Positions 2,179 through 43,900 of a DNA stretch of 64,000 bases are shown here, in pieces. Source of the stretch: Thecamonas trahens ATCC 50062 (taxonomy: Eukaryota > Protista > Apusomonadida). The position numbers and the translations under genes were made by a program. The stretch lies in the NCBI RefSeq assembly GCF_000142905.1, contig NW_013657661.1, forward strand, positions 62,001 through 126,000, read 5' to 3'. Each line of letters starts with the position of its first letter. The stretch's first letter is position 1. The notes below the pieces were generated by a model. That model saw nothing but the letters and a program-made list of their open reading frames with translations, ran no database searches and was not told the DNA's origin.

Positions 2179-4330
2179 TCAGTCGAGCCGCATCCCGTCC
2201 ATGGCCCACACCCGGACCCGCGACGCAAGCCACAAACCCACCACCAGACACTCGCAAACCATGGCAACAGAGCTGAGCCAAGCCCATGCCCGGGCCTCGC
2301 GGGTCGGATCCATTCGCACCAGCCCGACAACCTTGCCGTCATCAAAACACATCACCCCAGTCTGCAGCGTCTTTCCGCCGATCCGGCCGACCACCCTGTC
2401 GCTATCGAGCACAAGGCGCGGGAGCCATGCGGGGTCGGTGCCAACCGGTGGGGCGGCGACGGCAGTGGTGGCGTTGATGGCGGGGTCTCGTCCGCTGCCG
2501 CGTGCGGGATGCGCTTGTTGACGCCGGTGGCCAAGAGGTCGCGGACGAGGCCGAGAAAGTCACTCTCGGCCACAATCAGGTCTTGCTGTATCCAAAAACC
2601 GAAGAACTCGCCCTGGTTGCGCCCATCAAACGTCTTGGTGTCATATTCTGCCTTGGTGGCCTCGTCAACGTGCGGCGCGAGAAAGTGCCAGTGCAGATGC
2701 GAGGTCTTGCGGTCCGGGTGGACCCACTCGGAGAGCGACGACTGCGACTGGGCAAAGAAGCTGCCAAAGTACCGATCGCCCGTGGGCAGACCATGCGGCC
2801 AGATCTGGACAGCCGCAGCTTCGGTAGCAAGAAACTGAGCGTTCACCAGGCCCGAACCGTGGATGGCAACCAGCGCGGTGATGCTCCGCATCTCTGAAAT
2901 CTGCTCGTACAGCGTCATGTCCTCTAGCCGCAGCAGTGCGACCTCGACTCCGAGCTGGTTCCGAGCCGCCAGCGCAAGCTCGCGGTCGTTGAGGAGGAAC
3001 CGCTTGTTGGTGCGCGTGATAATCCCCAGGCGCGCGCGCTCCGGTTCAACTTTGGACGTCGGCAGCCCGAGCCGCGCAAAGATGTGATCGCGCATCGTGT
3101 CCGCCCCCCGCCGCCACCTTGCACAGTGGGCACGCTCTCAGTGAAGCATGTACCGTCGGCCTCGGCCCAAATCTTGCGGTAGCAATTGTTGGAGAGGAGC
3201 GTCAGCGTGTCGAGAAAGGCGCAATGTGTTTGCGCATCGCCGCCGGTCACGAGCGCCACAAACTCGCCCGACGTCACGCCCTTGCTCACTACGCGTTGAT
3301 AGTACGGCGCGTAGAGCTCGGCCCACCAATGGTAGTACATCGCCCGCTGAGCCGCGTTGGCAATCGAGACCGTAATGACCGGCTCATACACTTGGACCTT
3401 GCACTCGGCGGTTGCATTGCCGACAGCGGCGAGCTTGTTGCCACGGACGATGCTCCACGCTGTGTGGCCAGCCACCCAGGCCGGTGCCGGCTTGACCTCC
3501 AGCACCTCGCCGTCAGGGCAAAGAGGTCCGGGCGCTGCACGGGTGAGGCACACGCTGCTCGACAAGCACCATCCACACCACGAGTTGGCGAGACAGCCCT
3601 CGCGATCGTGCATGAGGCACGGGTCCGAGCTCAGCTCGCACATCAGATACGGCTCCAGCGGACCGTGGTCGGTCCCATCCGGCACACGGATCTGTGGCGG
3701 AAGGCCGGTCGGTGCCATCAGCATCGCGCTCAACCGCTTTTCGGCGTCCACCAGCCGCGTATAGTCATACTCGGGCTCAGCGGACGGCGCGATCTGCGGC
3801 ACCATATCGTGCCAGTCGACCTTGCCGGCGCGGAACGCTCTTACCGCCGCCGGCTCATCGCCGATCGACCGCGAGCCGCGTGCATGAAAGCGCAATCGCT
3901 GCCCTGTAGCCTTATCGCCCGCCTTTGCATCCCCTCTGTCCTCGTGCAGTCTCGCTGCCGCCGCAGGCTCCAGCAGCTGCTCCAGCGCCTCGGCCGATGC
4001 CCGCAGCGCATCGGCGACTTGCTTCATCTTGTCCTCTACCGGCTCATCATCCTCCGGCGCGAGCACCGAGTTGAGGACATGCGATCGGATCGCATGCCCC
4101 GCCCGCGACAGTACAGCCGCTGCCGCCCGCCCGGCCTCCATCGCCACCGACGACGCTGCCATCGTCTTGCACGGGCTGGCCCCGAGCTCAACCTTGACCG
4201 CCGGCGGCGGGAGGCTCGGCAGCGGGTAGAAGGCCCGCGGAACGGCACTCAGCAGCAAACAGACTGCAAACACTAACATGATGATGGACAACCCGTCTTG
4301 TCCACCAGCCATGACTCCCACACGCCACCG
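2179..4330 (-). CDS. Glycosyltransferase family 61 (DUF563; EOGT/POMGNT2-like) with N-terminal membrane anchor and PSI-like Cys domain; two single-base frame breaks (~3104-3109, ~2487)
   Basis: GT61 motifs RLGIITRTNKRFLLN, EDMTLYEQI, VAIHGSGLVNAQFL in ORF 2352..3095; YYHWW, a hydrophobic anchor and CLANSWCGWC in ORF 2924..4321. Branch ACTCAC (4348-4353) and acceptor TAG (4331-4333) imply an upstream exon. Confidence 0.75.
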
Positions 4331-4392
4331 CTACGCGTAGCAGTCAAGTGAGTCTCGTTCCAACTCGGCCCAGCCCAGCCCCTGCCGTGGCT

Positions 4393-4566
4393 ACCATTAA
4401 TCTCTCAACAAACAATGGTCAACCATTAATCTCCCAACAAACAATGGTCAACCATGAATCTCTCAACAAACAATGGTCAACCATTAATCTCCCAACAAAC
4501 AATGGTCAACCATTAATCTCTCAACAAACAATGGTCAACCATCACCGTCCCAACAAACAATGGTTA
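4393..4566. repeat. AT-rich 29-bp minisatellite, 6 copies (ACCATTAATCTCYCAACAAACAATGGTCA)
   Basis: Units start at 4393, 4422, 4451, 4480, 4509, 4538; last unit degenerate; no spacers. Confidence 0.95.
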
Positions 4567-4975
4567 CCACCATGACGCCAACGGCGCCACACCCCACCCT
4601 ACCTCCACCTCACCCCCCCACCCCCCACCCCCACCCCACCCACCTCCCCCCCCCCCCCCAGCCCTANNNNNNNNNNNNNNNNNNNNNNNNNNNNNNNNNN
4701 NNNNNNNNNNNNNNNNNNNNNNNNNNNNNNNNNNNNNNNNNNNNNNNNNNNNNNNNNNNNNNNNNNCCGGACCGCCACCACCCCACCCTACCCTCCCACC
4801 CTCCCACCCCCCCACCCCCCCACCCCCACCCCCACCCCACCTCCCCCCCCCCCCCCCCCACCCCCCCCCCCACCCCCCCCACCCGCCCCCATGTCCACCC
4901 CCTCAGCATCCCACCTCAACAGGTCCACCCTCATCCCGCTCCCTCCTCCCCCTCCACGGACTACACCGCCCACAG

Positions 4976-7854
4976 ACTCATGGCATGGCCGCCGCAAGAC
5001 AGACCTCGCGCCCTCGTCCGTCTCCTCGCTCTTCCATGCATACGCTGACGAGTTTCGCGCCCGGAGGGCAAGGACGGCAGAGCTGGTCGACGCAAATGCA
5101 TCTGCTGATTCAGATGGCCTGCACGCTGACCATGCCGGCCAAGGTCAGCCAGGAGACGCCCGTAACGACTCGTCCATCCCGGACGTGAGGGAGCTCTGGC
5201 TCCACGCCCAGGAGCTCAAGGCTGCTCGTGAGGCTGCCGATGAGAAGACCCAGCTCGCTCTGGTGGCTCGCGATCAATACAAGACAAAGGCGCTGGCGCT
5301 GGCCAAGCAGAACAAGGCGTACAAGGCCGCCCTGACAAAGGCGCGGGCCGAGCTCGCTGCCCGCGGCCCGCAGGCCGAGGCCTCGACCCAGGCGGCCGCT
5401 CGCGCTGCAGAGTCAGAGGCCGCCCGCGCTGACGAGCACGTTGGTGCGCTGCAAGTCCACATTAAGGCCATCAAGCGCCAGCTCGGCGCCAAGCTCAAGG
5501 ACGCGCTCGAGGCCAACGCCGCTCTTCAGGACGAGCTGGCAACCTCGCGCGTCGACGTCTCTGAGGCTCGCGCCCACGTCTCTGAGCTCGAGACCAAGCT
5601 CGAAGTTGTTGTCGAGCGCCATGCCCGCGACCGCGAGCTGCTCAACGAGGCCAAGGCTGTCGACATTGAGGCCGGCGAGAACGCCACCCTCGCAGCCGAA
5701 GCCTCGCTCTCGGCAGTCACCACCCGCCTCAAGGAGTACATCGAGTGGGAGGAGAGCCAGAACTTTGGTCCGGGCGTCGACGCCCTACTTGCGCCCGATG
5801 CCGCCCCTCCCTCGCCGCGCTCCATCGACGCCGCCTACTCGCAGCTCAAGGACGCCTACGTCCGCCTCCAGTACCGCGCCGAGCTCCTCACCGACGAGAA
5901 CGACAAGATGTCTCACCTCGTCGAGCAGCTTCGTGGCTCCAATCTTGTTCTCTACACCCACGCCAAGATTCACGCCGCGAGCGCATCTTCTGCTGCCGGC
6001 AACGACGCTATGGACGGCTCGTCCGGGAACAACCCACTCGCCGGCTCGCCCGCCGACCACCTCGAGTGCCAGGCCACCATCCGCAGCCTCAAGCAACAGC
6101 TCTACGAGCTCGGCGTAGAGGTTGCAGGCATGGACAACGAGGAGAGCGTCGTTCAGCCAGTTGCCGAGGTCGCAGACCTCGAGCGCCGTGCAGAGCACTG
6201 GGAGACCGAAGCCCGCCTCGCCCGCACCCGCATCAACGAGCTGGAGTCTCAGCTCGCGGCTGCCAACGACGCCCGCGCCGCGGAGGCTGCTGCTCGTGCA
6301 GACTCACTCCTGGCCTCCGACGCCAGCCTCATCGAGCTCCAGGGCCAGCTCATGTACCTGCAAGAGCTCGAGGCTTCCCTCCACCAGCCGCGCTGGGACG
6401 CGCTCCTCGCCCTCCCCTCGTCGGTTCTTGATCTAGCCATCGCAGACTTCCACACCTCGGGCCGCGAAGCCGAGTCGCTCGCTCTCCTCGAGTTCAAGCA
6501 CGCCCACGAAGCCCGCGGCAAGCGCATCGAGCTCCTCGAGGCGCAGGCCGACCAGCTCCGAAACCTTGCCGCCGTCTCGGCCCAGCTGTCGGGCGAGTCT
6601 GCGGCCGGTCGCTCGCCGGCCTCGACGACGCCCCCGCCGAGACCTGACGCCGCGCAAGACGTTGCTCACAAGCTCTTTGCCGAACAGGCATCTGAGCGCG
6701 AGGCCCGCAAGACTGCGCTCCTCCGGTCACAACTCGCCAAGCAGACGGCCATCATCGCAGCCCTCGACGATGCCTACCGAAAGACCCGCGAGATTGCTGC
6801 CACCGAGGCTGGCCTTCCGCTCCCATCGATGCCGATCGTCGAGGCCGAACGCGATGCGCGCAAGGTCATTGCCAAACTCGAGGCAGAGCTTCGTAGCCTC
6901 CGCAACGAGCTTGCCGAGGCCGAGGATAGCGTCCGCGACCACGAAGAGGCCCACGCCCACCTTGTGCGCGAGCTCATCTGGCTCCGCACTCGGACCGCCG
7001 ACAGCCTCGCCCTCTACGACGATGGGATCCAGGAGCGCGAGGACGCATTGGTCGCCAAACTCGCCCGCGCCTCGAACAAGGTCACCGATGCCGACACCAC
7101 TGGTGACAATGCTTCTCTCGCCACAGCCCTCGCCAAGGCGTACAAGCGCGCCGACCAGCTCGCCGCCGTCCGGCTTGACCGCATCCATATGCTACGCGCC
7201 AAGTTGGACGGCTGTGTGTGCGGCAAGCCCGGCGAGTCCGGTACCGAAGCTGCTCCTGTTGACTCTCACCCTGCCGGCGACGAGCTCGACTCGCAAACTG
7301 GCGCCGAGCCCCGCCGCGGCATCACCTACGACACATCGCTCGCCACCAAGTCACGCGCAAACCGTTCCATCGCCTGGGGAGACGACGACAACGCCGAAGA
7401 GGTCGCGGCTGTCGACAGCCTCTTTGCTCCGTACAAGCCTATCGGCCCCGCCGCTGCCCGCCACGGCGGCCGCCGGCGCAAGCTCAAGGACGCCTTCAAG
7501 CAACCATCGCCGCTGCGCCTGCTTATTCTCCCGTTCCTCGCCCATGCTATGCCCTCGCTTGCGCTTGGCCTCGACCCGGACGAGACCGAGCTGCAAGACG
7601 TTGCGTCGGGCGTGGCCTCGGACGAGCCGGTCGACCTCCCGCCACTCGGCTTCTTTTCGTTCTCCGGCGACGCCCAGTCTGGTCGCAACCCGGACGATAT
7701 CAAGGCCACCGACTGGCGCTCTGCCGCGCGCAAGCTTCGCCACGAGCGCGAGCTCGCCGCCGCAGGCGTCGGTGGCCCGCCGACGTCGTCTGACGCTGCT
7801 GCTGGCGATGCCGCAAGCTCCTCGGCCGCCCCGCAAGACACTGTGTGGCTGTGA
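4976..7854 (+). CDS. Long coiled-coil protein; 5' exon(s) probably in or before the N gap
   Basis: 987-aa ORF rich in E/A/L/K/R heptads with strong GC3 bias; C-rich intron-like sequence ending CACAG at 4975. Confidence 0.8.
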
Positions 7855-28133: not shown

Positions 28134-30622
28134 ATGGTCACCTACGTCTCGACCCGCGGTCAGGCCCCGGCTGTGGACTTTGCTACGGCGGTACTGGCTG
28201 GTCAAGCGCCCGACGGTGGCCTCTACGTTCCGTCGAGCCTTCCGCACCTCTCGCTCCCGCGCCTGGCATCGCTCATCGATGCCGACTATGCGGCACTCGC
28301 CGCAGCAGTCATGGCGCCCTTTGTGGGCGACTCGCTGACGACCGAAGAGCTCGACGCTGTCCTTCGTTCTGCCTTTGCTGCACCTGATCGGTTCGATACG
28401 TCCGATGTGGCTCCGCTGGCCTCACTTGCTTCGCATCCCGACACCTCCATCCTCGAGCTCTGGCACGGGCCCTCGCTCGCCTTCAAGGACATGGCCATCG
28501 GCGTCCTTGCTCGCCTCCTCGCCATCTTTGCCGCTCGTGCCCCGGGGCCCAAGCCTACCAACATTGTTGTCGCCACTTCGGGTGATACCGGGCCGGCTGC
28601 TGTCGCCGCAGCCGCAGGCATCGATCCTGCTCTCCTCCACCTCTGGGTCCTCTTCCCGCACAACCGCGTCTCGCGCGAGCAGGCCGCACAGATGCAGTGC
28701 GAGCTCCCACCCAACGTCACCGTTCTCGAAGTCGCCAACTCGGACTCGGACTCGCTCGACACTATTCTCGACGATGTCTTCAACGACAAGGCTCTCGCCA
28801 AGGACGTCTCGCTCGGCTCGCTCAACTCCATCAACGTCGCCCGCGTCCTCCTCCAGTCTGTCCACTACATCTACGCCTTCCTCGCCCACATCCGCGCCCG
28901 CGCTGGGCCCGGACCGCACTCGTCCTCCGCCCTCTGCAGCCTCATGCTTGCCCACCCGATCCGGTTTGCTGTTCCCACTGGCGCTTGTGGTGACATGGTC
29001 GGCGGCCTCTACGCCGCCGCCATGGGCCTCCCAGTCTCCGAGTTTGTCATCGCCACCAACGCCAACGCCATTGTCGCCGACACCCTCACTCACGCACGCC
29101 TCGTCCCGCCGCCGCCAGTCGTCCCTACTCTCTCCAACGCCATCGACATCCTCGTTCCCTACAACCTCTGGCGCTTCCTCTACCACACCGCAGCCGCAGA
29201 GTGCCCGACCACACTCTCGGCGTGGATCGATGCCTTTCGCAGCGGCGCCACCGTCACCCTTCCTCCGCTCGCCGCATGGGGCACTCCCGCGCCGTTCCGT
29301 GCCACCTCGATCTCCGACGCCACCACCCTCGCCACCATTGCTGCCACCTACGCTGCCGACAGCTATCTCCTCGACCCGCACTCGGCGGTCGCGCTCGCCG
29401 GCTCTGTCGCCATCCCACCGCCGTCCGCCGGCCAGCTCCACACCATCTGTCTCGCCACTGCCCATCCCGCCAAATTTGTCGACGTCGTCCACGCTGCCCT
29501 CCCGCTTGTCGACGCGCCTGCCGGCATCGCTCATCCTTCCATGGACGCCGCTCTTGCCGCCACTGCCAACCACGCCGTCCAGCTCCCATCCGTCGCCGCT
29601 GCCAATGCCTACCTCCGCCGCGCCATGCTCGAGCTTACATCCTCACACGCTCCACCTGCCCGCGACGTCCACATCGCCTCGCCTGATGACATTGCCGCCG
29701 CCGTCTCGTGGGCCGACGCCCTCGCCGCTGCCCGCCTCGCCTTCTCCGCCTCGCCGGACGACATTGTCGGGCCCATGCCCATGGCCTTTGACTTTGCCGA
29801 TGCCTGCGGTGAGAGCCATGTCAAAGGTGCCCATATCGGCGGCTCGTCCATCTTTGCACTCAAAGTCGCCTCGTCCTTCTACAAGGCCTCGCCGTCTGGA
29901 TCCGGCCTTGTCCTCGTCTTCTCTGCCACAAACGGCGCTCCGCTCGCTGTCCTCCTCGACAACGCCCGCCTCACAGACATGCGCACCGCCGCAGCGGGCA
30001 CACTCGCCATCACCACGCTCCGTCCAGGGCCTATCACCAAGCTCGCCATCCTCGGCGCAGGCATCCAGGCCAGCAAGCAGCTCGCCTCGCTTGCCGCAGC
30101 AGTCGAAATCCGCTCTGTCACACTTTGGGCCCGTCGCCCGCCGCCGCCGCCGCCGCCGTCGATCACATGTCCTCGCACCATCCGCACCTTGCAATCTCTG
30201 CCGCGCCGTCCATCAAGGACGCGCTCGCTGCCGCAGACGTCGTCATCACTGCCACGCCGGCCTCGAACCCGCTAATTGCTTCACCCGATTGGCTCGCGCC
30301 GTCCGCGCTTGTTGTTGCTGTCGGCTCAGACTCGCCGCACAAGCAAGAACTTGACGCCTCGGTCCTCCACGCCGCCCTCAGTGCGGGTGGCGCCGTCATC
30401 GTCGACTCGATCGAGCAGACAGCCGCGTTCGGTGAGCTCCGCTCTATCGCTCACGTTCTTCCTCACCCTGGCGTCTTTACCCTCGGCGACATTGTCCGCG
30501 GCACGGCCCTTCCACCGCCGGCTTCTGCACTCACCATCGTTGACCTCACCGGCATGGGTGTCCAGGACGCTGCTCTTGCCGAAATTGTCTACAATCGCCT
30601 CGCCTCGCCGTCGCGCCTCTAG
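28134..30622 (+). CDS. Threonine synthase-like (THNSL2-type) PLP enzyme fused to an ornithine cyclodeaminase/mu-crystallin domain; frame break at 30137-30139
   Basis: YVSTRG, APDGGLYVP, ELWHGPSLAFKD, ATSGDTG, NSINVAR, LATAHPAKF, then in the same frame LTDMRTAAAG and ILGAGIQA; after the break DVVITATP, AVGSD, DLTGMGVQD. Confidence 0.9.
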
Positions 30623-34868: not shown

Positions 34869-37800
34869 CTACGTCGACGACCCGTCGGACGAACCGCTGC
34901 CGACGCCGCCCTCGCCTCCGCCGGCAGTGGTTGAGCTCTCGTCGAGCGTGGTCTTGCGCGGAGTATACGGGCGGTCAAAGATGCCGGCCGACGAGTTCAT
35001 GTCGGACGCCATGAGAAAGTCGTCAAACGCGCCTGTGTTTGCAAACGCTGGGTTGTCAGCGACCACGTCCTCGTTGGAGGGCATGTCGATCTCGCCACCG
35101 GTCTCCATCGTGTCGCCGAGCGAGTCGTTCATCGGAATGTCGTCGCGTTTTCAGCAGCTGGCGGCCGGTGCCGCGCCTGTGTCATGTACAGCACCTCCAG
35201 CGCCGCCTCCAGCGCCACGGCAGCTTCGGGATCAATGTCCGGTACCTCCTTGGCGAGATGCGCCGCGAGACGCGCTGCACGGTCTGACGTCGACGAGTAC
35301 TTGAGGCTTCGCGACTGCCGGATGTGAACCACGTCACGGTAGATCGAGTAGACCACAATGCCAAAGAGAGCGGCGAGCGCGAGCATGACGCCGACAAAGA
35401 ACAGATCCCCGGTACCGCTCTGTGCCTCGCGCTCGGCGTACGAGCCGACGCCGAGAAGAAGAAAAACGACAAGCATGAGTGTGAGCTGAAAGTCGACCTC
35501 GTTGTAAAGCGGGTAAAAGTAAGGCTTGTACCGGAGAACAAAGAACGCATACGAGAGAAGGACCACCACCATCAGGCCCGACTGGACGAGCTGTCGACCC
35601 GAGAAAAAGACCGCAGCAACGACCAGTGCCAGTCGCTTGCCAAGATCCGCCACGCCGACCCAGTAGTACGGGATGCGGAAGAGCCGGTAGAGCGCACCGT
35701 ACCGTGCGTACGTCAGCGGTGTGAAGAGCTCATGCCGCCGCCCGATCACGCACGCAATCGAGTACACTGGCACGCCGACGACAAATGAGATGAGCGCCGC
35801 CAGACCCAGCGGGAACGCTGTCCACCACCGCGAGTCAAAGCACGCCACGCCCGGGTCGGCGTCAAGCACAAAGTCGACCGAGCCTGGTAGCCTCGTGCAG
35901 TCAAACAGCGCCACCACAGCCCGCGCCATCGGAATGTACGTTACAGGCGCTACCGAGAAGATGACAGAGTCCATGATGGTGGCCAGAGGCACAAACTCGA
36001 GCGGCGCAAAGACCGTCCAGCGCCCGCCAAAGTACTTGAGCATGATGACTCCGGCCACAATGAGAACAAGAAGGAGGAACGGGATCGTGACCGAGAGCAC
36101 GTAAAGCCCGTAGAATCCGACAGAACACTCGGACGCCGTCAGTGAGAGATCCACGTTGGCCGCGTTGAACAGCGAGAGCGCAGACTTGGCCCGCGAGTCC
36201 CACCCAAAGTCAGAGTCCGACACAATGCCCACGACCTGGAACGCCACCACCGCCATCGACACCGTCGCCGGCACGTTGATCCGCCGAATCGCTGCCATGG
36301 TACCCGTCCCGGAAATCGTGGTTGTCTGCGCCGTCCGATACGCAATCGTCAACGCTGCTCCGATGGCAATCACCATGATCGCCACAAACACCCCGATGAC
36401 GCCAACAGACGCTACCAGCGGGCACTTGGCGCAGTTGTCCGTCGGGTCGGTGTAGTAGCCCGAAGAGCACTCGTTGCACATGTAGTCCTCGTACCCGACG
36501 TTGCACACTCCTGCGCCCGCGCATCCACCCGACCGCCGACACCGCACAAACTCGGTGATCGGGTTGGTCTTGGAGGGATAGAAGCCCTTGGCCGCCTCCG
36601 GCAGCGCCACTCCTCCCGGGCATCGCCCGCCCTCGGGGCACGCCACGCAGGCCACGTCCGTCCGCCCCGTCAGCGTGTAGAAGTTCTCCTTGCAAACACA
36701 CGGCGTGGTCGAGACAATCACAACCGCCCCATCAACCCCAGTCGTCGTGTTCGTCCTAGCCAGCCGAATCGTGTTCGCTGGGCAAAGCGGAATCGCCTCG
36801 CACGTGCCGCCCGACGTATCGTCTGAGAACGAGCCTGCCGAGCAGAACGCACACCGGAGCTCATCGCCAAACGGCGAGACCCGACCCTTGCCCGGCGGGC
36901 AGAGCGTGACATTGACATACACGCTTGTTTCGGGGAGCTCGGCCCCGCTCACCCCGCGGACGCTGACGTCCAGTCGGAACAACCGCCCGGTCACGCTCGG
37001 CACGCTCGGCACGCTCACCGCAATCACCAGCGGGCTAAGCGATGCCTGCCCGGTCGCAGCATCAAACGCCGCTCCGGTCTGGAGGTTCTCCAGCACGCTC
37101 TCGGGCTCGGTCGTCGTCACCAGCGCCACCATCCCAGCCTCGGTCGCCACCGCCCCGTACGCATCGCGCACTTCGAGCAGCCCGCTTCCGAGCGCTTCAC
37201 CAGACACGACCGCTGCTGGCAACGTTCCGTCCACGGGCGCCAGTGTCACAGGCGGTGTGCGAAGCACAACCTCACCTCCGCTCGCACCCGTGCGGTCCAC
37301 AAACCACGCGGCAGGTGGCGCGTCGCTTGCGCCCGAAGGCACGCAGTGCATGACGCTGCCGGTCACAAGCCCGCTCGTGTCTGCCGCGGATACCACAGCG
37401 TCGCACACAAAGCCAAGACTGCCAAACGGAGCAACACAATCGGTCACTGAAGCCGAATCATTGAGCACAAACGCGCCCGCGCTCGGTACCAGCGGTACGC
37501 TCTGTCCGCGGATCACAGCTGTCGACTCGACCGTAGATGGCCAGCTGTAGCCCTTGGCCACGCTTGCCAGTCCGCCGCCAAACCCAGCAGTGCAACTCGT
37601 GATCGCTGTGCTCCCAGAGAGCACAATCGATGTGCTGCCCTCGGCCCCACGCACCGCCAGCCCACCGCCGGCCACGCCGGCCGAGTTGCCGACAATCGTC
37701 GCGTCGACAAGCGAGATGTCGGCGCTCTCGGCTGCCGACGTCACAAGAAGTGCACCGCCGACACCGCTCGGTGCCACGTTTTGCTCCAGCCGCGAGCTCC

Positions 37801-40654
37801 CGGTCACCGCAAGCTGACTGTTGGGCCCCATGACAGCCACCGCGCCGCCACCACCGCCGACCGCGCCGAGCCCGTGTGCTGTGTTGCGCAGAAACACAGT
37901 ATCGCGTGCCTCAAACCGTGGACCGAGGCCAACGAGGCCGACTGCGCCCCCGGCTAGCCGCGCCGTGTTGTCGGCAAAGACGCAGCTGCGCGCGAGGAGG
38001 TACGCGCCCTCGGCCACAATCACGCCAGCGCCGATGCCGCTGAATGCCTGTGAAGGGCCCGAGTTGGCATTCGACGCACCTTGCACCGTCACATTGGTCA
38101 GCCGCAACACGCCCGAGCTCCCGCTCACCTGCAGAAACGAGCCGTCGGTCACTCCGGCGCCAAAGGTACCACGCGAGAAGACTACGTTATTCGCAGCGAG
38201 CACACCCTGGGTCGAGAGCAACGAGCCGCCTGTGGGGCCACAGTCAAACTGCGCAGGCTGACCTGCGTCGCCGGCAAGCATCACCACCGACGACGCAGGC
38301 AGGCTGATGCCAAATCGCTTGGAGCACGACCGAAGTTGCGCTCCCGGTGCAAACTCAACTCGGCGCGAGAAGCAGAGCGAAAACATGGCGCTCGAGAGCT
38401 CATGGGTGGAAAAGTTGCCCGAGACTTGGGTCACTCGCTGGCCCACATCCGAGAGCATCGCATTGCGGGTCCAAACCCTGAACGGTGCGTTTGCAAACGA
38501 GCTGAACATGACATCCATGAACAAATCGCCGTTGAGGTCGGCAAGTGCCACCGAGTAAAAGCCAGCCGACGGCAGCGACGCCACCGTGAGCGCGTTGGCC
38601 AAGAAGCCGCCAGTGCCGTCGTTGAACACGATAGCGACGCTCGTGCCGCCGGCAAGAACCAAATCAGGCGCGAGGTCGTCGTCGATCCGGCCGGCGGCCA
38701 GCGCAAACGGTGCAAAGGCCACAGGAGCCGAAGGGGCCGGAGAAAACGTCGTTCCACCCTGTGCAAACAGCGCGGTCACTACGTTTGGCCCGCTGCTACC
38801 AACCGCAATGTCCAGCCGGCCGTCCAAGTTAAAGTCGGCGAGCGCGAGGCCGGTCGGTGCCGTAGCCGTCACCGAGACTGCGCCGGATGTGGTGAGCCCG
38901 CCGGGAGCTCCGGGCACAATGGCAACAAAAAGCGGGCTGTTGCCGGCGACGACAAGATCGTCCAGCCCGTCGCCAGTCACGTCACCCATTCGCGCATGGC
39001 GCGTAAAGGCAGACGAGAGGCCAAGATCGACCGGTGGAGCAAACGTTCCGCCCAGGTTGAGGTAAAAGCTCGGCGAGTTGTTGATCAGACGGCCGTGAAC
39101 AATGTCGACAAGACCATCATGGTTGATGTCGGCCACTACGATCGGGCCAAAGACGTTGCTGGCAATGGCCACCGGTTCGTCAAACTGGCCGCGGCCGAGG
39201 TTACGGGCCCAGTACAGGCCAGAGGTTGCGCCGGTCCATACCAGGTCAACGTCGCCGTTGTTGTCGATGTCGCCAGGCGCAATGCTGTAGATGGTCGTTG
39301 CCGAGGCACCCGACGCCACAACCTGCGGCACCGAGGAAAATGTGCCCGACCCGTCGTTGGCAATCCACACAACCTCGGCCTCGTCATTGTCGGCAAAAAT
39401 AATGTCAGGCGCGGCGTCGCCGTTGAGGTCGGCAGCAAGGACGATGTAGGTCTTAAGGTTGTCGTAAATGGTCGGACTGGCTGCAAACTGCATGTCGTCG
39501 GCCTCCGTCACATTGTTGGAGTACCAAATCACGCCGTCGCCGTAGCCGATGACAACATCGACGAGGCCATCGCCGTTGATCTCACCCAGCACGACGCCCG
39601 GAATGGTGGCGCTGGTGACGGGAATCTCCAGCTGAGCGCCAAAAGTAGTGGCGCCCGAATTGAGAGAAACAGTAGCAGTATCCGCGCGCGATGTGACCAG
39701 GTCCAGAGCGCCGTCGCCGTTGGCATCGCCGACCACGAGAGACGCCGTGTCGATGCTGATGTCAAGCACTTTCCGGTTGACCGTCGACATGGCGCCGCCG
39801 CCAAGACCCTCAATGAGCCACGCTCCACCGGACAGACGCGTCGTGATAATGTCTACGACACCGTCATTGGTGAGGTCTGCCACAACCAGGCCTTCGACAT
39901 CGGCTGGCGGTGCCACAACAGACTTCAAGTTGGCAGGAAAGCCTCCTGTCCCGTCGTTGCGCCACAGCAGCGTGTCCAGGCCCAACCCAGTCAACACCAG
40001 GTCGTCGAGACCGCTCCCGTCCACGTCGGCCACGGCCACAAACTTGCCACTGCAGGCCAGGCTCAAGCCGAGAGAAAAGCCACCACTGCCGGTGTTGGTG
40101 TAGATGCGGACTTCTCCACTGCTGAAAACGACAACAATGTCGTCGTACGCATCGGCGTTGATCTTGCCCGCGCCGAGGTCCTCCATAACCAACGCGGTAG
40201 AGATTTCCACGCCGGGGGCAAACAATCCCGAGCCGTTGTTGAACACTGCGGTGGCCTCCGTAATGTGAAAGATAGCAAGATCGTTGGCCAAGCCCTCTCC
40301 ATCAAAGTCAGCCACCACCGGTGATCGATGCTTGCCAGCAGTCTTACTCACGAGTACGAGCTCTGGAGCGCCGGTAAAGTCACCTGGCGTCACTGGCGGA
40401 CAATAAAGTCTGAGCCCAGCAGGACTCGTACCGGTGCCAACCACTGCCACACACGCCATGCTTCCCACTCTAACAACGGCCGGAATAGAAGCATACCCAT
40501 TCCCGTAACCAGAGACCACAGTCGTTGCGGTAAGTGGCTCGAAGGAGAGCTTGCACTTTTGCCCGGACACGGAGAGCAAGACCGACGACAAGGTAGCAAC
40601 GAGGACGACCACAACCACCGCCAGGGTCTCTCCCACAGGGCGCATAGGGACCAT
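34869..40654 (-). CDS. Large cell-surface protein: FG-GAP/VCBS repeats, Pmp-like GGA beta-helix, Cys-rich repeats, multi-pass TM domain; frame break at ~35150 before the cytoplasmic tail
   Basis: Signal peptide; many D-x-[ND]-x-DG-x-x-D motifs; F-x-x-N-x-A...GGA repeats; CPPG/CSAGSF/CPEGGRCPG; hydrophobic C-terminal helices with DPGVACF and YGALYRLF. Confidence 0.85.
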
Positions 40655-41041
40655 GAACAGAGGGGGAGAGGGGGGACAAGTAATGGCTGTGGAGAGAGAG
40701 GAGAAGAGGGCGACGGGAGGGGAGGGGAGGGGAAGAGGGGGAGGGGGAGGGGGAGGGGGAGTGGCTGGTGAGAAGGAGGACGAGCTGGGAATGACTACAC
40801 GCGTGCATTGGCAACGACTGCGCATGCCCGGGTGGGGGGGGGGGGGGGGGGGGGAGATAAAATTTTGTACTGGCGGAAGATGGCTCGGTCTACCGGGTCG
40901 CTGACCTTCTTCTGCCCGTTCGGCGCCAAGTTGGTGTCGAACCCAACCGACACGGGCCAAGGCGTAGGTAGTGCTGGGCACCTCGCAGGCAGATGGTGGT
41001 CAACACCTGGCGCGGAAAGAGCATTTGCTGGGTTGGTGGAT

Positions 41042-43900
41042 ATGGACGGGTTTGAGCTGTCGTCATCGTCGGCGTCAGCCATGGGCCTTCCCTACGCCTC
41101 GCCACCTCCGCCACGGTCGTCGTCAGAGGTGGTGGGCCGAGGACGGGGCTCGGCACGGGGTTCAGGACGCGGCCATACAACGGCTGGCGGATACGGTACT
41201 GGGGCAGCGGCTGGAGTAGCGGCTGGCTTGGACATGGTGCTCACTTCGTCGGATGATGACGGCCTGCTCGCGGCGCCTGGTGGGGGCACCGATCCTTTTG
41301 CTGTCTCGCACTCGCCGCCGCCGTCACCGTCACCCACGCCAGCGCCGGCCGGCGACTATGCTGCGGTTGATGCGCTCAACGACCGCGAGTTGGCGAGTGT
41401 GGCCGGAGCCGGCGAGGACGAGATACTGGGTCAAGTGGCGTGGGATGATGTCGATGCGCAGATCACGGCACTGACCGACGGAGTGTTTGAGGCCGAGGTG
41501 ACGGTCTCGTCTGGGGCTGGGCCGATTGAGGCGCGGCTTCGGGTGACAGCGTCAGGGCTGGTTCTGACGCGGAGTGGAGCGGGCCCTGCCGCGGGCGACG
41601 TGCTGCTCAAGGCGCGATTTCCGCTGACCGGGCCGATTGACGGCCCGCGGGTGGTCCGTGTGACTCCGATGGCCGAGTCGGAGACGGCAGTTGTAATGCG
41701 CGTGCCGCCTGCGCGCGGGACTGGTCCGCCGACATCATTTTCGCTGTATACGCTCGACGCCGCGACGCGGACAACCCTCTGCACAGCGATTGACTCGTTT
41801 CAGGTGCAGGTCCTGGCGGCACACGCCAACGAGCTTGCCGCCGAGTCGCGGTTTCTCGATGACCCATACGAGATCGCAGAGCAGGAGGCGGCAGCGGCGG
41901 CGGCAGCGCGCGCGGCGGCGTCGCGGTCGATCATCTGGTCGCAGGACGCGCCCGGCTCACCAGGCTCATCAGGCCGGGTCCTGGCCGTCGATGAGGGCGA
42001 CCGCGAGGTGGATCCGTTTGACCTGGGTACGCGGCGCGAGGCACTTGTGGTCGAACCCGACGCGGTCGACGAGACACTGCTCACTACGCTTCCGGGCCCG
42101 CACATGGCGGCCGTGGTTGATCAGGCGCTGGCACAGTACAAGGAGCAAGTGCGGGCGGACGTGCAGCAGCTCAAGCGTGAGCTTGCCAAAAAGTACCGCA
42201 AGTCCAACGCCGAGCTCATTGCCAAGCTCAAGGACAAGGTGATCAAGGATGCCAAGAAGACGGGAGCACTGCAGCTCTCGCTGGCAGGCTTTGGGCTGAC
42301 GGCGTGGCCTGAGGCCATCACCTCGTGGTCACTGCGGCACTCGTCGTGGAAGACGAACCTACTGGTCCTCGACATTTCAAACAACTGCCTGACGGTGCTT
42401 CCGTCGGCGATCGGGCGGCTCACTTCGCTGCGAGTCCTCGACGTCGGCTACAACGCGCTGACGGCGCTTCCGTCCTCCATTTCGTCGCTGACTTCGCTTA
42501 CGGTTCTTCAAGCGCAGCACAACAAGCTACTCTCACTCACCAACGGCATCGGTGGCGTGCGGGCGCTCAAGCGGCTCTCGCTGGCAGGCAACGCCATCCG
42601 GATGTTTCCGCCCGAGCTGCAGTTTCTTTCACGGCTGGAGGAGCTCGACTTGAGCTCGATGGATTTGTTCCGGGCACCCGAGTGGATTGCGCTCTTTCCG
42701 CTCCTCCGCTCGCTCAACCTCGAGTCGAACCACTTGCAGACCCTGCCCGGCGTGCTCATGCGGCTGGGCTCGCTCGACACTGTTGGGCTTGCGCACAACA
42801 ACTTGACGACGTTCCCGCCGGTCCTCACTGCGTGTCGCAGCCTCACCGGCGTCGACCTCTCCTTCAACGGCTTGGAGGACTTGCCCGACACGGTGGTCAA
42901 GCTCTCAGCGGCCGAAGTCTTGCTGGAGGGCAATCCGCTGTCGCGGCTACCGGAGCGACTCCGCGACGGCCCGTGGGCCGCGGTCGTCTCGTACGTCCGC
43001 GACCCAATGGCATGGCTTGCGACCGAACAAGGTCGGACGCCGACGGCGCGCTCGCCAATCGCGGTTCCGGGTTCGCCGGCGGCACTTTGCGCCACATCGC
43101 CATCGCGAGCAGTGGCCGAAGTCGCGACCGAGCTCTCGCTGCTCCAATCGCGGCTAGCCATGCTTCCGGACCTTGACGAGCTCGGAGTGACAAACGAGGC
43201 CGATCGAGACGGCGTGGAAATGACCTCACTGTCGCCGCCGAGCTCGTCCAAGTTTGATCGGGTCATTCGGGTTGTCTCACGCGAGCCCACAGTTGTGGAG
43301 GAGGTTCTGGAGCCAGAGCTCGAGCCAGAACCTGTACATAAGGCCAAGGCCGATGCGGCGCCGCCGATGACAGCTGACAAGCGAGTGAGGATGGGGAGGA
43401 GGAGCAGTCGGGCTGCATCGCCGGTGCCGATAGTGCAGGCGGCGCAGCCGCCGCCACCGACGCTCCAGATTCCACGCGGAGCAGAGAACATGCCGCCGCA
43501 GAGAGACGGAAGCACGCGCTTGCCCGAGAGAGGACGGTCGATGTCGAAGACGGTGACGTTTTCGCCGCATCCAGGCGCGAGGCACAGGACAGGGCAGCGG
43601 TCACCATCGGCACCAGATGCGTGGCCGTCGTCGCTGGCGCTCTCGGGCGTGGCGCACGCCGACGCCGACTCGTCAGTGGAGACGGCAGATCTGTTGTACT
43701 CGTCGTACTCGGACGACGACGTCGGCGCGATGAGAAGCCGAGTCGAGTACGGGCTGGCAGATGCGGTGCCGCGGGCGGTGCCAGCCGATGTTTCTGTAGT
43801 GGTTGCGGAAGAGCGGGCGCTGTACGCGTCGATCCGTGCGTCGCTCGTCAACACGATGCACTCGCTGGAAGCAGCTGCCGGCGAGCGGTGGGGTGAATAG
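41042..43900 (+). CDS. Leucine-rich repeat protein with disordered termini
   Basis: About 10 LxxLxLxxNxLxxLP repeats (LDISNNCLTVLP, LDVGYNALTALP, LNLESNHLQTLP), capped by LEGNPL. Confidence 0.85.
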   Translation: MDGFELSSSSASAMGLPYASPPPPRSSSEVVGRGRGSARGSGRGHTTAGGYGTGAAAGVAAGLDMVLTSSDDDGLLAAPGGGTDPFAVSHSPPPSPSPTPAPAGDYAAVDALNDRELASVAGAGEDEILGQVAWDDVDAQITALTDGVFEAEVTVSSGAGPIEARLRVTASGLVLTRSGAGPAAGDVLLKARFPLTGPIDGPRVVRVTPMAESETAVVMRVPPARGTGPPTSFSLYTLDAATRTTLCTAIDSFQVQVLAAHANELAAESRFLDDPYEIAEQEAAAAAAARAAASRSIIWSQDAPGSPGSSGRVLAVDEGDREVDPFDLGTRREALVVEPDAVDETLLTTLPGPHMAAVVDQALAQYKEQVRADVQQLKRELAKKYRKSNAELIAKLKDKVIKDAKKTGALQLSLAGFGLTAWPEAITSWSLRHSSWKTNLLVLDISNNCLTVLPSAIGRLTSLRVLDVGYNALTALPSSISSLTSLTVLQAQHNKLLSLTNGIGGVRALKRLSLAGNAIRMFPPELQFLSRLEELDLSSMDLFRAPEWIALFPLLRSLNLESNHLQTLPGVLMRLGSLDTVGLAHNNLTTFPPVLTACRSLTGVDLSFNGLEDLPDTVVKLSAAEVLLEGNPLSRLPERLRDGPWAAVVSYVRDPMAWLATEQGRTPTARSPIAVPGSPAALCATSPSRAVAEVATELSLLQSRLAMLPDLDELGVTNEADRDGVEMTSLSPPSSSKFDRVIRVVSREPTVVEEVLEPELEPEPVHKAKADAAPPMTADKRVRMGRRSSRAASPVPIVQAAQPPPPTLQIPRGAENMPPQRDGSTRLPERGRSMSKTVTFSPHPGARHRTGQRSPSAPDAWPSSLALSGVAHADADSSVETADLLYSSYSDDDVGAMRSRVEYGLADAVPRAVPADVSVVVAEERALYASIRASLVNTMHSLEAAAGERWGE

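What the first reader, a model, noticed from the sequence alone, without database searches (positions are those of the whole stretch)
28134..30622. THNSL2-type PLP lyase fused to an EutC-like cyclodeaminase: a candidate two-step amino-acid pathway in one polypeptide
Seen: a complete threonine-synthase fold with the PLP lysine (AFKD) runs without a stop into an OCD/mu-crystallin domain. The junction (~29640) lies upstream of the frame break, so the fusion does not depend on the repair. Knowledge: VPTGACGD and AIDILVPYN resemble animal THNSL2 (VPTGAAGN, AMDIQVPYN), a catabolic phospho-lyase of unclear physiological role, more than biosynthetic ThrC (VPTGNFGD, MDILVSSN). The second domain (HVKGAHI..FALKVASSFY, LLDNARLTDMRTAAAG, GSD, DLTGMGVQD) resembles the bacterial EutC subgroup. 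Fold-II PLP enzymes pair with OCD-like proteins in EutB/EutC (ectoine catabolism) and SbnA/SbnB (diaminopropionate synthesis). Inference: the lyase makes a reactive enamine/imine that is passed to the NAD(P)-dependent domain. The fusion would be a Rosetta-stone clue to THNSL2 function, possibly with a horizontally acquired half.
Basis: partly seen in the sequence, partly recalled or inferred. Interest (0 to 1): 0.8.

Follow-up and report, generated by a model that had tools for sequence, protein, structure and literature searches.

The report
Threonine-synthase-like enzyme fused to imine reductase
A marine protist (Thecamonas trahens) carries one gene that joins a THNSL2-like vitamin-B6 enzyme to an NAD-dependent OCD/mu-crystallin enzyme, and the same two enzymes sit side by side with a kinase in many marine bacteria, pointing to an undescribed two- or three-step amino-acid pathway.

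Summary
Window 28134-30622(+) encodes Thr_synth_N/PALP/THR4_C with the PLP lysine, running in frame into an OCD/mu-crystallin domain. One frame change lies in a (CCG)7 tract at 30134-30160. The organism is Thecamonas trahens. NCBI lists the gene as 'threonine synthase' (795 aa) and hides the break with a 101-nt 'intron' (30117-30217) that deletes conserved OCD residues. An intact 871-aa homologue from a Tara Oceans contig keeps those residues.

The N-half is neither canonical ThrC nor an orthologue of animal THNSL2 (AU p=0.011). It belongs to the same large GAxG/PYN superclade as THNSL2. It sits in a small eukaryote clade next to a bacterial clade.

New here: that bacterial clade lies in a conserved cassette, OCD then ThrC-like then homoserine-kinase-like kinase. 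OCD is immediately upstream in 35 of 57 loci. The cassette copy coexists with a normal thrC in 5 of 5 genomes tested. A third, divergent ThrC-like/OCD fusion (P0133) also exists.

Best reading (about 0.4): a phospho-lyase whose enamine/imine product is reduced by the OCD domain, as in BhcB/BhcD. Substrate and product are untested. Thecamonas has no recognisable homoserine kinase. I found no paper describing this.

The parts
28134..29642 (+). THNSL2-superfamily threonine-synthase-like PLP domain (Thr_synth_N, PALP, THR4_C), 503 aa. Start Met at 28134.
   Evidence: Pfam hits. TIGR00260 scores 152.4 bits, below the 167.1 cut-off. Best PDB match is Brucella ThrC 4f4f at 1.2e-67. Trees.
28485..28487 (+). 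Codon of the PLP-binding lysine K118 (SLAFKD)
   Evidence: Invariant column K118 in A1. Aligned to the FKD lysine of solved ThrC structures.
29643..29675 (+). Short linker (about 11 aa, SHAPPARDVHI) between the two domains, in frame
   Evidence: Alignment with the Tara fusion and with bacterial stand-alone OCDs
29676..30134 (+). First half of the OCD/mu-crystallin domain: substrate-binding K and R motifs, Rossmann ILGAGIQA, beta-2 VTLWAR
   Evidence: PF02423 positions 82-164. NCBIfam PRK08291 and EutC partial hits. 35% identity to the Aquimarina cassette OCD.
30134..30160 (+). Zone of the single frame change, inside the c(gcc)7 / (ccg)7 tract
   Evidence: Frame 1 is homologous up to WAR(RP). 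Frame 2 is homologous from (SP)AAAAAAVDHM onward.
30117..30217 (+). 101-nt GT..AG 'intron' of the public gene model (795-aa protein). It is a patch over the frame break.
   Evidence: The P0001 sequence joins ...VEIRS to DALAAAD.... The skipped residues align with the conserved V-x-W-x-R and the following helix in every homologue. The model loses invariant W and R.
30134..30622 (+). Second half of the OCD/mu-crystallin domain (GSDSPHKQELD, VDLTGMGVQD) plus the stop codon
   Evidence: PF02423 positions 164-312, E 1.3e-20. 31% identity to the Aquimarina cassette OCD. 47 of 65 cassette-invariant residues are kept over the whole domain.

Best explanation
The locus is one gene for a bifunctional enzyme of about 829 aa. 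Its N-terminal fold-type-II PLP domain belongs to the THNSL2-like (GAxG/PYN) branch of the threonine-synthase family. I infer that it acts as a phospho-lyase on an O-phospho-amino acid. O-phospho-L-homoserine is the likeliest substrate, and phosphothreonine is also possible. The reaction would eliminate phosphate and give an aminocrotonate/2-imino-acid intermediate. The fused OCD/mu-crystallin domain would then use NAD(P)H to reduce that imine to an amino acid (2-aminobutanoate if the substrate is O-phosphohomoserine) instead of letting it hydrolyse to the 2-oxo acid and ammonia. This is the same logic as BhcB/BhcD and as proposed for EutB/EutC. In marine bacteria the same two activities are separate, adjacent genes together with a homoserine-kinase-like kinase that makes the phospho-substrate. 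Shown: the architecture, clade membership, conserved gene linkage and recurrent fusion. Inferred: substrate, product and direction. The frame change at 30134-30160 is most likely an assembly error in a triplet repeat.
For: The fusion is in frame. An intact 871-aa homologue, P0002, is 51% identical over the full length on a GC-rich Tara contig. A third colinear fusion, P0133, has its ThrC-like half in a different clade.

Bacterial linkage: among close-clade loci, OCD is immediately upstream on the same strand in 35 of 57. Of 35 loci with at least 5 kb on both sides, 26 have OCD, 26 have the kinase and 21 have both.

The cassette ThrC-like is a paralogue beside a higher-scoring canonical thrC in 5 of 5 genomes tested.

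Trees: the canonical GNFG clade and the GAxG/PYN superclade each have 98 support. Animal THNSL2 lies in the latter. The fusion lies next to the cassette clade. By my own knowledge, not checked here, the only characterised GAxG/PYN member is mouse THNSL2, an O-phosphohomoserine/phosphothreonine phospho-lyase (Donini et al. 2006, cited in PMC2748086).

The OCD domain's nearest solved relatives are AlaDH 1omo, CRYM 2i99 and iminosuccinate reductase 6rqa. True OCD is much weaker.

The kinase scores best on homoserine-kinase models PRK05231 and thrB_alt but below their cut-offs. ThrC-like/APH-kinase fusions P0095 and P0204 exist. In 7 flavobacterial loci a Thr/Ser-dehydratase-like gene (EutB/BhcB-like) lies next to the OCD, and such an enzyme would make the same kind of imine.
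Against: No enzyme of this clade or cassette has been assayed, so substrate and product are guesses. 2-Aminobutanoate has no obvious use. Thecamonas shows no recognisable homoserine kinase: no GHMP thrB, no HomK, and only a 23.5-bit thrB_alt hit. The source of a phospho-substrate there is therefore unclear. The fused OCD domain does not fall inside the cassette-OCD clade in the best trees, although uniting them is not rejected (AU p=0.33). Some gammaproteobacterial clusters lack the kinase and instead carry an ABC importer, a HisN-like phosphatase and a GntC/VioD-like PLP enzyme, which hints at a different, perhaps basic, substrate. The gene is the only ThrC-family gene in the genome, so a threonine-synthase role cannot be excluded. 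The frame break could be a real inactivating mutation.
Confidence: 0.4

Rival explanations
1. SbnA/SbnB-type chemistry. The ThrC-like domain replaces the phosphate of O-phosphohomoserine (or phosphoserine) with an amine nucleophile such as glutamate. The OCD domain then cleaves the adduct oxidatively with NAD+, releasing a diamino acid (for example 2,4-diaminobutanoate) and 2-oxoglutarate.
For: SbnB is an OCD-family enzyme and gives weak NCBIfam hits (TIGR03944) on both halves and on cassette OCDs. A ThrC homologue, MetM, that does gamma-replacement on O-phosphohomoserine is described in 10.1101/2024.10.14.618325. The Aquimarina cluster adds homoserine dehydrogenase, a GNAT and a small cupin, which loosely recalls ectoine-type chemistry.
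Against: SbnB-type scores are far lower than the AlaDH, BhcD or cyclodeaminase-type scores. SbnA is a cysteine-synthase-type enzyme, not a ThrC-type enzyme. The extra Aquimarina genes are not conserved in the other loci.
Confidence: 0.12
2. The N-half is simply Thecamonas's housekeeping threonine synthase. The OCD domain is an unrelated passenger, for example a ketimine reductase or cyclodeaminase acting on another substrate.
For: It is the only ThrC-family locus in the 28.7-Mb assembly. A homoserine dehydrogenase is present. The public annotation calls it threonine synthase.
Against: It scores below the TIGR00260 cut-off (152.4 against 167.1). It lies outside the canonical clade with 98 support. 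It lacks the GNFG/xSN motifs of all solved threonine synthases. No homoserine kinase of three known types was found. Its bacterial sister clade coexists with a true thrC. The OCD link recurs as an operon and as independent fusions, which argues against a passenger.
Confidence: 0.13
3. The gene is a pseudogene in this strain. The frame change in the (CCG)7 tract is real and truncates the OCD domain after its Rossmann beta-2 strand, leaving at most a ThrC-like protein with a crippled tail.
For: The assembly as given has the break. Triplet-repeat tracts are mutation-prone.
Against: Both sides of the break are otherwise intact. They keep 47 of 65 residues that are invariant in bacterial homologues, with no other stop or shift. 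An earlier first-stage note on the same assembly reports another gene hidden by two frameshifts (s1-743398, unchecked), which suggests assembly-level indels.
Confidence: 0.15
4. The public model is right: 30117-30217 is a genuine 101-nt spliceosomal intron and the protein has 795 aa.
For: The GT..AG ends exist and splicing restores the frame.
Against: The 'intron' translates, in two frames, into residues homologous to the conserved V-x-W-x-R strand and the following helix of every OCD homologue, including the intron-less Tara fusion. Splicing would remove invariant W and R of the NAD(P)-binding fold.
Confidence: 0.03

Closest known systems
Animal THNSL2 (threonine synthase-like 2; O-phosphohomoserine/phosphothreonine phospho-lyase)
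   Same: Same three-domain architecture (Thr_synth_N, PALP, THR4_C). Same PLP-phosphate-loop and PYN motifs (GAxG[ND], D-I-x-x-P-Y-N). Same major clade, separate from canonical ThrC. Like animals, Thecamonas shows no homoserine kinase.
   Different: It is not an orthologue (AU p=0.011), with about 35-40% identity at most. It is fused to an OCD domain, which no listed THNSL2 carries.
Biosynthetic class-II threonine synthase (E. coli ThrC, yeast THR4, Brucella ThrC 4f4f)
   Same: Same fold and domain order, same PLP lysine, 1e-46 to 1e-67 to solved structures.
   Different: A different deep clade with GNFG/xSN motifs. The Thecamonas protein is below the TIGR00260 cut-off. The bacterial sister clade is a second copy beside true thrC.
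BhcB/BhcD of the beta-hydroxyaspartate cycle (fold-II PLP dehydratase plus OCD-family iminosuccinate reductase)
   Same: The pairing of a fold-type-II PLP eliminase with an OCD/mu-crystallin NADH-dependent imine reductase that saves the amino group. BhcD (6rqa) is among the nearest solved structures, and BhcD/BhcB models hit cassette proteins.
   Different: The eliminase here is ThrC-type acting, presumably, on a phosphate ester made by a kinase. The proteins are fused in the protist. BhcD equivalog scores are far below cut-off.
EutB/EutC (hydroxyectoine utilisation) and SbnA/SbnB (diaminopropionate synthesis)
   Same: A PLP fold-II enzyme paired with an OCD-family enzyme. EutC and the PRK08291 'cyclodeaminase' model are the best NCBIfam models for the fused OCD halves.
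   Different: Scores are roughly a third to a half of the equivalog cut-offs. The PLP partner belongs to another subfamily. No ectoine or siderophore genes are nearby.
Bacterial hom-thrC-thrB operon
   Same: The cassette order dehydrogenase, ThrC-like, kinase mirrors hom-thrC-thrB. The kinase is homoserine-kinase-like.
   Different: The first gene is OCD-family, not homoserine dehydrogenase. The genomes keep a separate canonical thrC. Acidimicrobiales loci with true hom-thrC fall in the canonical clade.

Membership tests
Threonine synthase, EC 4.2.3.1 (TIGR00260 equivalog) | Score above the curated cut-off | tested here: not met
   152.4 bits against a cut-off of 167.1. The own-genome search gives 152.5, 'over cut-off: no'.
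Threonine synthase, EC 4.2.3.1 (TIGR00260 equivalog) | Groups with characterised or operon-linked ThrC (GNFG / xSN motifs) | tested here: not met
   It has GACGD and PYN. It lies in the other deep clade, with both sides at 98 support.
Threonine synthase, EC 4.2.3.1 (TIGR00260 equivalog) | PLP lysine and fold-II core | tested here: met
   K118 in SLAFKD, with PALP and Thr_synth_N hits.
Threonine synthase, EC 4.2.3.1 (TIGR00260 equivalog) | Pathway context: a homoserine kinase in the genome | tested here: not met
   TIGR00191: none. TIGR02535: none. TIGR00938: 23.5 bits only. Aquimarina kinase query: none. The assembly may be incomplete.
Threonine synthase, EC 4.2.3.1 (TIGR00260 equivalog) | Makes threonine from O-phosphohomoserine | not testable with these tools
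   Needs an enzyme assay or thrC complementation.
THNSL2 orthologous group | Architecture and GAxG[ND] / D-I-x-x-P-Y-N motifs | tested here: met
THNSL2 orthologous group | Forms one clade with animal and Capsaspora THNSL2 | tested here: not met
   The THNSL2 group has 96 support without it. The constrained tree is 44.2 lnL worse, AU p=0.011.
THNSL2 orthologous group | Phospho-lyase activity giving 2-oxobutanoate | not testable with these tools
   Needs an assay.
OCD/mu-crystallin family (PF02423) | Pfam score above gathering threshold over the whole domain | tested here: met
   45.6 and 74.1 bits (cut-off 24) on the two pieces, covering profile positions 82-312.
OCD/mu-crystallin family (PF02423) | Rossmann GxGxxA and conserved substrate-binding and catalytic residues | tested here: met
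   ILGAGIQA, K in HVKG and LKVAS, RTAAAG, GSDxxxKQE, DLTGxxxQD. 47 of 65 cassette-invariant columns are kept.
OCD/mu-crystallin family (PF02423) | Uninterrupted reading frame | tested here: not met
   One frame change at 30134-30160 in this assembly. The Tara homologue is intact.
EutC (TIGR02992 equivalog) | Score above cut-off (471.65) | tested here: not met
   88.8 plus 91.9 bits on the two halves.
Bacterial OCD / ThrC-like / kinase cassette (defined here) | ThrC-like half groups with the cassette ThrC-like clade | tested here: met
   A 28-row clade of cassette sequences plus the small eukaryote group with the fusion, SH-aLRT 92. FastTree gives 98.
Bacterial OCD / ThrC-like / kinase cassette (defined here) | OCD half groups with the cassette OCD clade | tested here: inconclusive
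   It is outside the clade in the best trees. Uniting them is not rejected, AU p=0.33. Placement shifts when P0133 is added.
Bacterial OCD / ThrC-like / kinase cassette (defined here) | Partner APH-fold kinase | tested here: not met
   Not found in Thecamonas.

The most novel reading that the evidence does not exclude
The THNSL2-like branch of the threonine-synthase family, including the enigmatic animal THNSL2, is the PLP half of a widespread, undescribed 'kinase, phospho-lyase, imine reductase' pathway. The pathway would remove a gamma- (or beta-) hydroxyl from an amino acid while keeping its amino group. Apusomonads and at least one other lineage have fused the last two steps into a channelling enzyme. 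If so, the physiological product of THNSL2-type enzymes would be an imine handed to a reductase, not 2-oxobutanoate.
Probability: 0.3. Interest if true: 0.8.

Novelty: new variant of a known kind. Interest (0 to 1): 0.66.

Why it matters
THNSL2 has had a demonstrated in-vitro activity since 2006 but no known physiological role, and animals lack the kinase that makes its best substrate. Three lines of evidence tie its superfamily to an OCD-family NAD(P) enzyme and to a homoserine-kinase-like kinase:

- a conserved operon in many marine Bacteroidota, Desulfobacterota and Gammaproteobacteria;
- the apusomonad fusion;
- a second, divergent fusion.

This gives a concrete, cheap biochemical test and identifies culturable bacteria (Maribacter, Zobellia, Aquimarina, Desulfopila) in which to run genetics. 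It also shows that hundreds of bacterial 'threonine synthase' annotations are second copies with another function. Finally, the public Thecamonas gene model carries a false intron.

Tried and rejected
**Complex prediction.** I submitted the Maribacter ThrC-like (A2) and OCD (A3) pair. The tool did not fold it, under its rule on pairing chains that look eukaryotic with microbial ones. There is no verdict and it is no evidence either way.

**Neighbourhoods of the nearest stand-alone OCDs.** P0437, P0517 and P0499 show no ThrC-like gene. That clade gives no functional clue.

**Kinase search in Thecamonas.** A search with the Aquimarina kinase found nothing. The family models also gave nothing usable.

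**Literature.** Searches for THNSL2 with threonine synthase, threonine synthase with OCD and homoserine kinase, Thecamonas with threonine synthase, and O-phosphohomoserine with 2-aminobutyrate and OCD found no description of the fusion or the cassette. Subscription journals are not covered.

**The search of earlier findings.** A word search for frameshifts returned nothing.

**OCD gene as a substitute homoserine dehydrogenase.** I considered this because the operon order mimics hom-thrC-thrB. I rejected it because the Aquimarina cluster also has a true homoserine dehydrogenase, the genomes keep canonical thrC, and OCD-family chemistry acts at C-alpha.

**Not attempted.**
- Structure prediction of the fusion, because the tool returns no inter-domain geometry.
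- Any use of the human THNSL2 entry (P0377), which was left out of scripts and trees.

**Correction to my notes.** The correct span is 30117-30217 (entry 4).
Full report
**What is there.** The window comes from Thecamonas trahens ATCC 50062, an apusomonad. The assembly is 28.7 Mb, the window is about 64% GC, and it maps to contig C19:62001-126000. The identification rests on a 100%-identical public protein, P0001.

From the Met at 28134 one frame stays open to 30275. It encodes Thr_synth_N (E 1.9e-22), PALP, THR4_C and then OCD_Mu_crystall profile positions 82-164. A second frame, 30125-30622, carries OCD positions 164-312 (E 1.3e-20). The PLP lysine is K118 (SLAFKD). The linker between the domains is only about 11 residues. 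Flanking genes are ordinary eukaryotic ones: F-box, Nop53, Agenet, FG-GAP, LRR and cullin. The fusion as described is therefore real and does not depend on repairing the break.

**The frame break.** Homology follows frame 1 up to VTLWAR(RP) and frame 2 from (SP)AAAAAAVDHM onward. A single frame change therefore lies in the c(gcc)7 tract, 30134-30160. The public 795-aa model (P0001) bridges it with a 101-nt GT..AG 'intron', 30117-30217.

That stretch translates into residues that align with the conserved V-x-W-x-R strand and following helix of every homologue. One of those homologues is the intact 871-aa fusion P0002 from a Tara Oceans contig, which reads SVTVWTRRPESAATYVE. The spliced model loses an invariant W and R. 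The intron is a gene-model patch.

Apart from this one shift, the OCD domain keeps 47 of 65 positions that are invariant in 30 bacterial homologues. I therefore favour an assembly indel in a repeat over a dead gene, but only reads can settle it. An earlier, unchecked first-stage note (s1-743398) reports another gene in this assembly hidden by frameshifts.

**What the N-half is.** It is the only ThrC-family locus in the genome. It scores 152 bits on TIGR00260, below the 167 cut-off.

I built trees from 238 rows (FastTree) and 89 rows (IQ-TREE, C20 PMSF). They split the family into two deep clades, each with 98 support.

- The first clade carries GNFG...xSN motifs. It holds the canonical thrC of five bacterial genomes and the hom-linked thrC of Acidimicrobiales. 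The solved threonine synthases of Brucella and yeast carry the same GNFG...xSN motifs (alignments; they were not rows in the trees).
- The second clade carries GAxG...PYN motifs. It contains animal THNSL2 together with Capsaspora (P0207) and Chromosphaera.

Thecamonas plus the Tara sequence (100 support) sit in a five-row eukaryote group with Creolimax P0122 (96 support). Two further relatives, P0165 and P0210, are stand-alone genes on intron-bearing eukaryote contigs. That group joins a large bacterial clade (92 support). Forcing the fusion into the THNSL2 group costs 44 lnL, AU p=0.011.

The verdict on the N-half is THNSL2-superfamily, not a THNSL2 orthologue, and not canonical ThrC.

**The bacterial cassette (new here).** The bacterial sister clade consists of proteins of about 484 aa annotated 'threonine synthase'. 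They are 36-40% identical to the Thecamonas domain.

In Aquimarina the gene is preceded, 5 nt away, by an OCD-family gene. It is followed by an APH-fold kinase, a homoserine dehydrogenase and a GNAT.

I fetched 80 loci from species genomes; 63 close-clade loci (60 of these plus three fetched) were scanned with seed proteins, which gave the following.

| Set of close-clade loci | Result |
|---|---|
| 57 loci with at least 1 kb upstream | OCD immediately upstream on the same strand in 35 (gap -16 to +88 nt) |
| 56 loci with at least 1 kb downstream | kinase immediately downstream in 37 |
| 35 loci with at least 5 kb on both sides | OCD in 26, kinase in 26, both in 21, either in 31 |

The hosts are marine Bacteroidota (Maribacter, Zobellia, Tenacibaculum, Dokdonia, Saprospiraceae, Lewinella), Desulfobacterota, and Gammaproteobacteria (Granulosicoccaceae, Oceanospirillaceae, Alteromonas).

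All five genomes tested also carry a canonical thrC that scores 285-303 bits on TIGR00260, against 210-224 for the cassette copy. The cassette copy is thus an accessory paralogue. The kinase scores best on homoserine-kinase models but below their cut-offs.

Two variants stand out.
- Seven flavobacterial loci add a Thr/Ser-dehydratase-like gene (EutB/BhcB-like) next to the OCD gene.
- Several gammaproteobacterial loci replace the kinase with a YheO-type regulator, a polar-amino-acid ABC importer (its binding protein is Lys/Arg/Orn-like), a HisN-like phosphatase and a GntC/VioD-like PLP enzyme.

**Other fusions.** A HMMER scan of 1.84 billion cluster representatives listed its best 150 hits. Among them, P0001 and P0002 match across both domains in one stretch. 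P0133 (808 aa, a cluster of seven) matches in two stretches.

Pfam shows P0133 has the same four-domain architecture, and it is colinear with P0002 at 28% identity. Its ThrC-like half sits in a different GAxG clade. Its OCD half joins the cassette OCDs with 100 support.

The OCD link is therefore seen three ways across the superclade. In the fusions the order is ThrC-like then OCD, whereas the operon order is OCD then ThrC-like. The fusions are not simple read-throughs of the operon.

Kinase fusions also occur: ThrC-like with APH in P0095, and APH with a THNSL2-group protein in P0204.

**The OCD half.** The best NCBIfam models are PRK08291 'cyclodeaminase' and EutC, at a fraction of their cut-offs. 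The nearest solved structures are listed below.

| Structure | E-value |
|---|---|
| Archaeal alanine dehydrogenase, 1omo | 2.6e-15 |
| Mu-crystallin / ketimine reductase, 2i99 | 4.6e-15 |
| Iminosuccinate reductase BhcD, 6rqa | 5.2e-13 |
| True ornithine cyclodeaminase, 1u7h | 1.7e-7 |

The closest stand-alone relatives (36-45% identity) are bacterial where named, for example Gemmatimonadota. Three of them have no ThrC-like neighbour.

In the best trees the fused OCD pair lies outside the cassette-OCD clade. However, a tree uniting them is not rejected (AU p=0.33), and the placement moves when P0133 is added. The origin of this half is unresolved. Thecamonas's other OCD gene (C64) is very distant.

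**Mechanism.** What is shown is that two enzyme families are repeatedly linked, with a kinase, apart from the threonine pathway. The rest is inference by analogy with two systems.
- BhcB/BhcD: a fold-II dehydratase makes iminosuccinate and an OCD-family reductase turns it into aspartate.
- EutB/EutC: a proposed dehydratase plus reductase pair.

On this analogy the kinase makes an O-phospho-amino acid, most simply O-phosphohomoserine. The THNSL2-like enzyme eliminates phosphate to an enamine/imine. From my own knowledge, mouse THNSL2 converts O-phosphohomoserine and phosphothreonine to 2-oxobutanoate (Donini 2006, listed in PMC2748086). The OCD enzyme then reduces the imine with NAD(P)H. Fusion would channel a reactive intermediate.

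I put this at about 0.4. The rivals are:
- SbnA/SbnB-like replacement followed by oxidative cleavage (0.12);
- a plain threonine synthase with a passenger domain (0.13);
- a real pseudogene (0.15);
- a real intron (0.03).

Thecamonas has homoserine dehydrogenase but no recognisable homoserine kinase. That is the same puzzle as in animals, and a phagotroph may obtain phospho-amino acids from its prey.

**Novelty and limits.** The gene is already in public databases under a misleading name and with a faulty model. I found no paper on the fusion or on the cassette.

The kind of system, a fold-II PLP eliminase paired with an OCD-family reductase, is known. The ThrC-type partner, the kinase-activated substrate and the fusion make this a new variant.

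No activity was tested. Most metagenomic relatives are unnamed. The trees used quick searches on compositionally biased sequences.

Noticed in passing
P0133 (808 aa; members P0282-P0287), metagenome contigs up to 14.9 kb: A second, divergent ThrC-like/OCD fusion lineage, 28% identical to the Tara fusion. Its OCD half groups with the bacterial cassette OCDs. The host organism is unknown, and the contig has wide gene spacing plus a 1988-aa neighbour.
   Followed up: partly
L017:3140-9980 (Aquimarina sp. AU58): An eight-gene same-strand cluster: threonine-aldolase-like PLP enzyme, NIPSNAP, small cupin, OCD, ThrC-like, APH kinase, homoserine dehydrogenase, GNAT. It looks like a small-molecule pathway starting from aspartate semialdehyde.
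   Followed up: partly
L036, L055, L058, L073, L045, L027, L060 (Gammaproteobacteria, Desulfobacterota): A variant cluster with a YheO-type regulator, a polar-amino-acid ABC importer (binding protein Lys/Arg/Orn-like), a HisN-like phosphatase and a GntC/VioD-like PLP enzyme around OCD and ThrC-like. It mostly lacks the kinase (L060 has it). This hints at an imported, perhaps basic or already phosphorylated, substrate.
   Followed up: partly
P0095, P0204, P0198, P0150, P0172, P0230: Other threonine-synthase-family fusions: ThrC-like with APH kinase (both orders), GHMP kinase with canonical ThrC, ThrC with methyltransferase, SURF1 with ThrC, and OHCU decarboxylase with ThrC-like (776 aa, a cluster of 12).
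   Followed up: no
L013:278-2113(-) beside the Tara fusion gene (2451-5066): The only neighbour on the Tara contig is a divergently oriented TPP enzyme (acetolactate-synthase-like, 611 aa). Such enzymes use 2-oxobutanoate. This may be chance. Thecamonas has no such neighbour.
   Followed up: no
window 30117-30217: The public Thecamonas gene model places a false 101-nt intron over a frame break. Other models in this assembly may hide indels the same way.
   Followed up: yes
window 35129-40981(-): A 1950-aa ORF with eight FG-GAP-like repeats (integrin-alpha-like) and a DUF7630. Next to it is a 1030-aa LRR protein at 40808-43900(+).
   Followed up: no
G000:C64:183537-184319(-): A second, very divergent OCD/mu-crystallin gene in Thecamonas (182 bits on PF02423), unrelated to the fused domain.
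   Followed up: no
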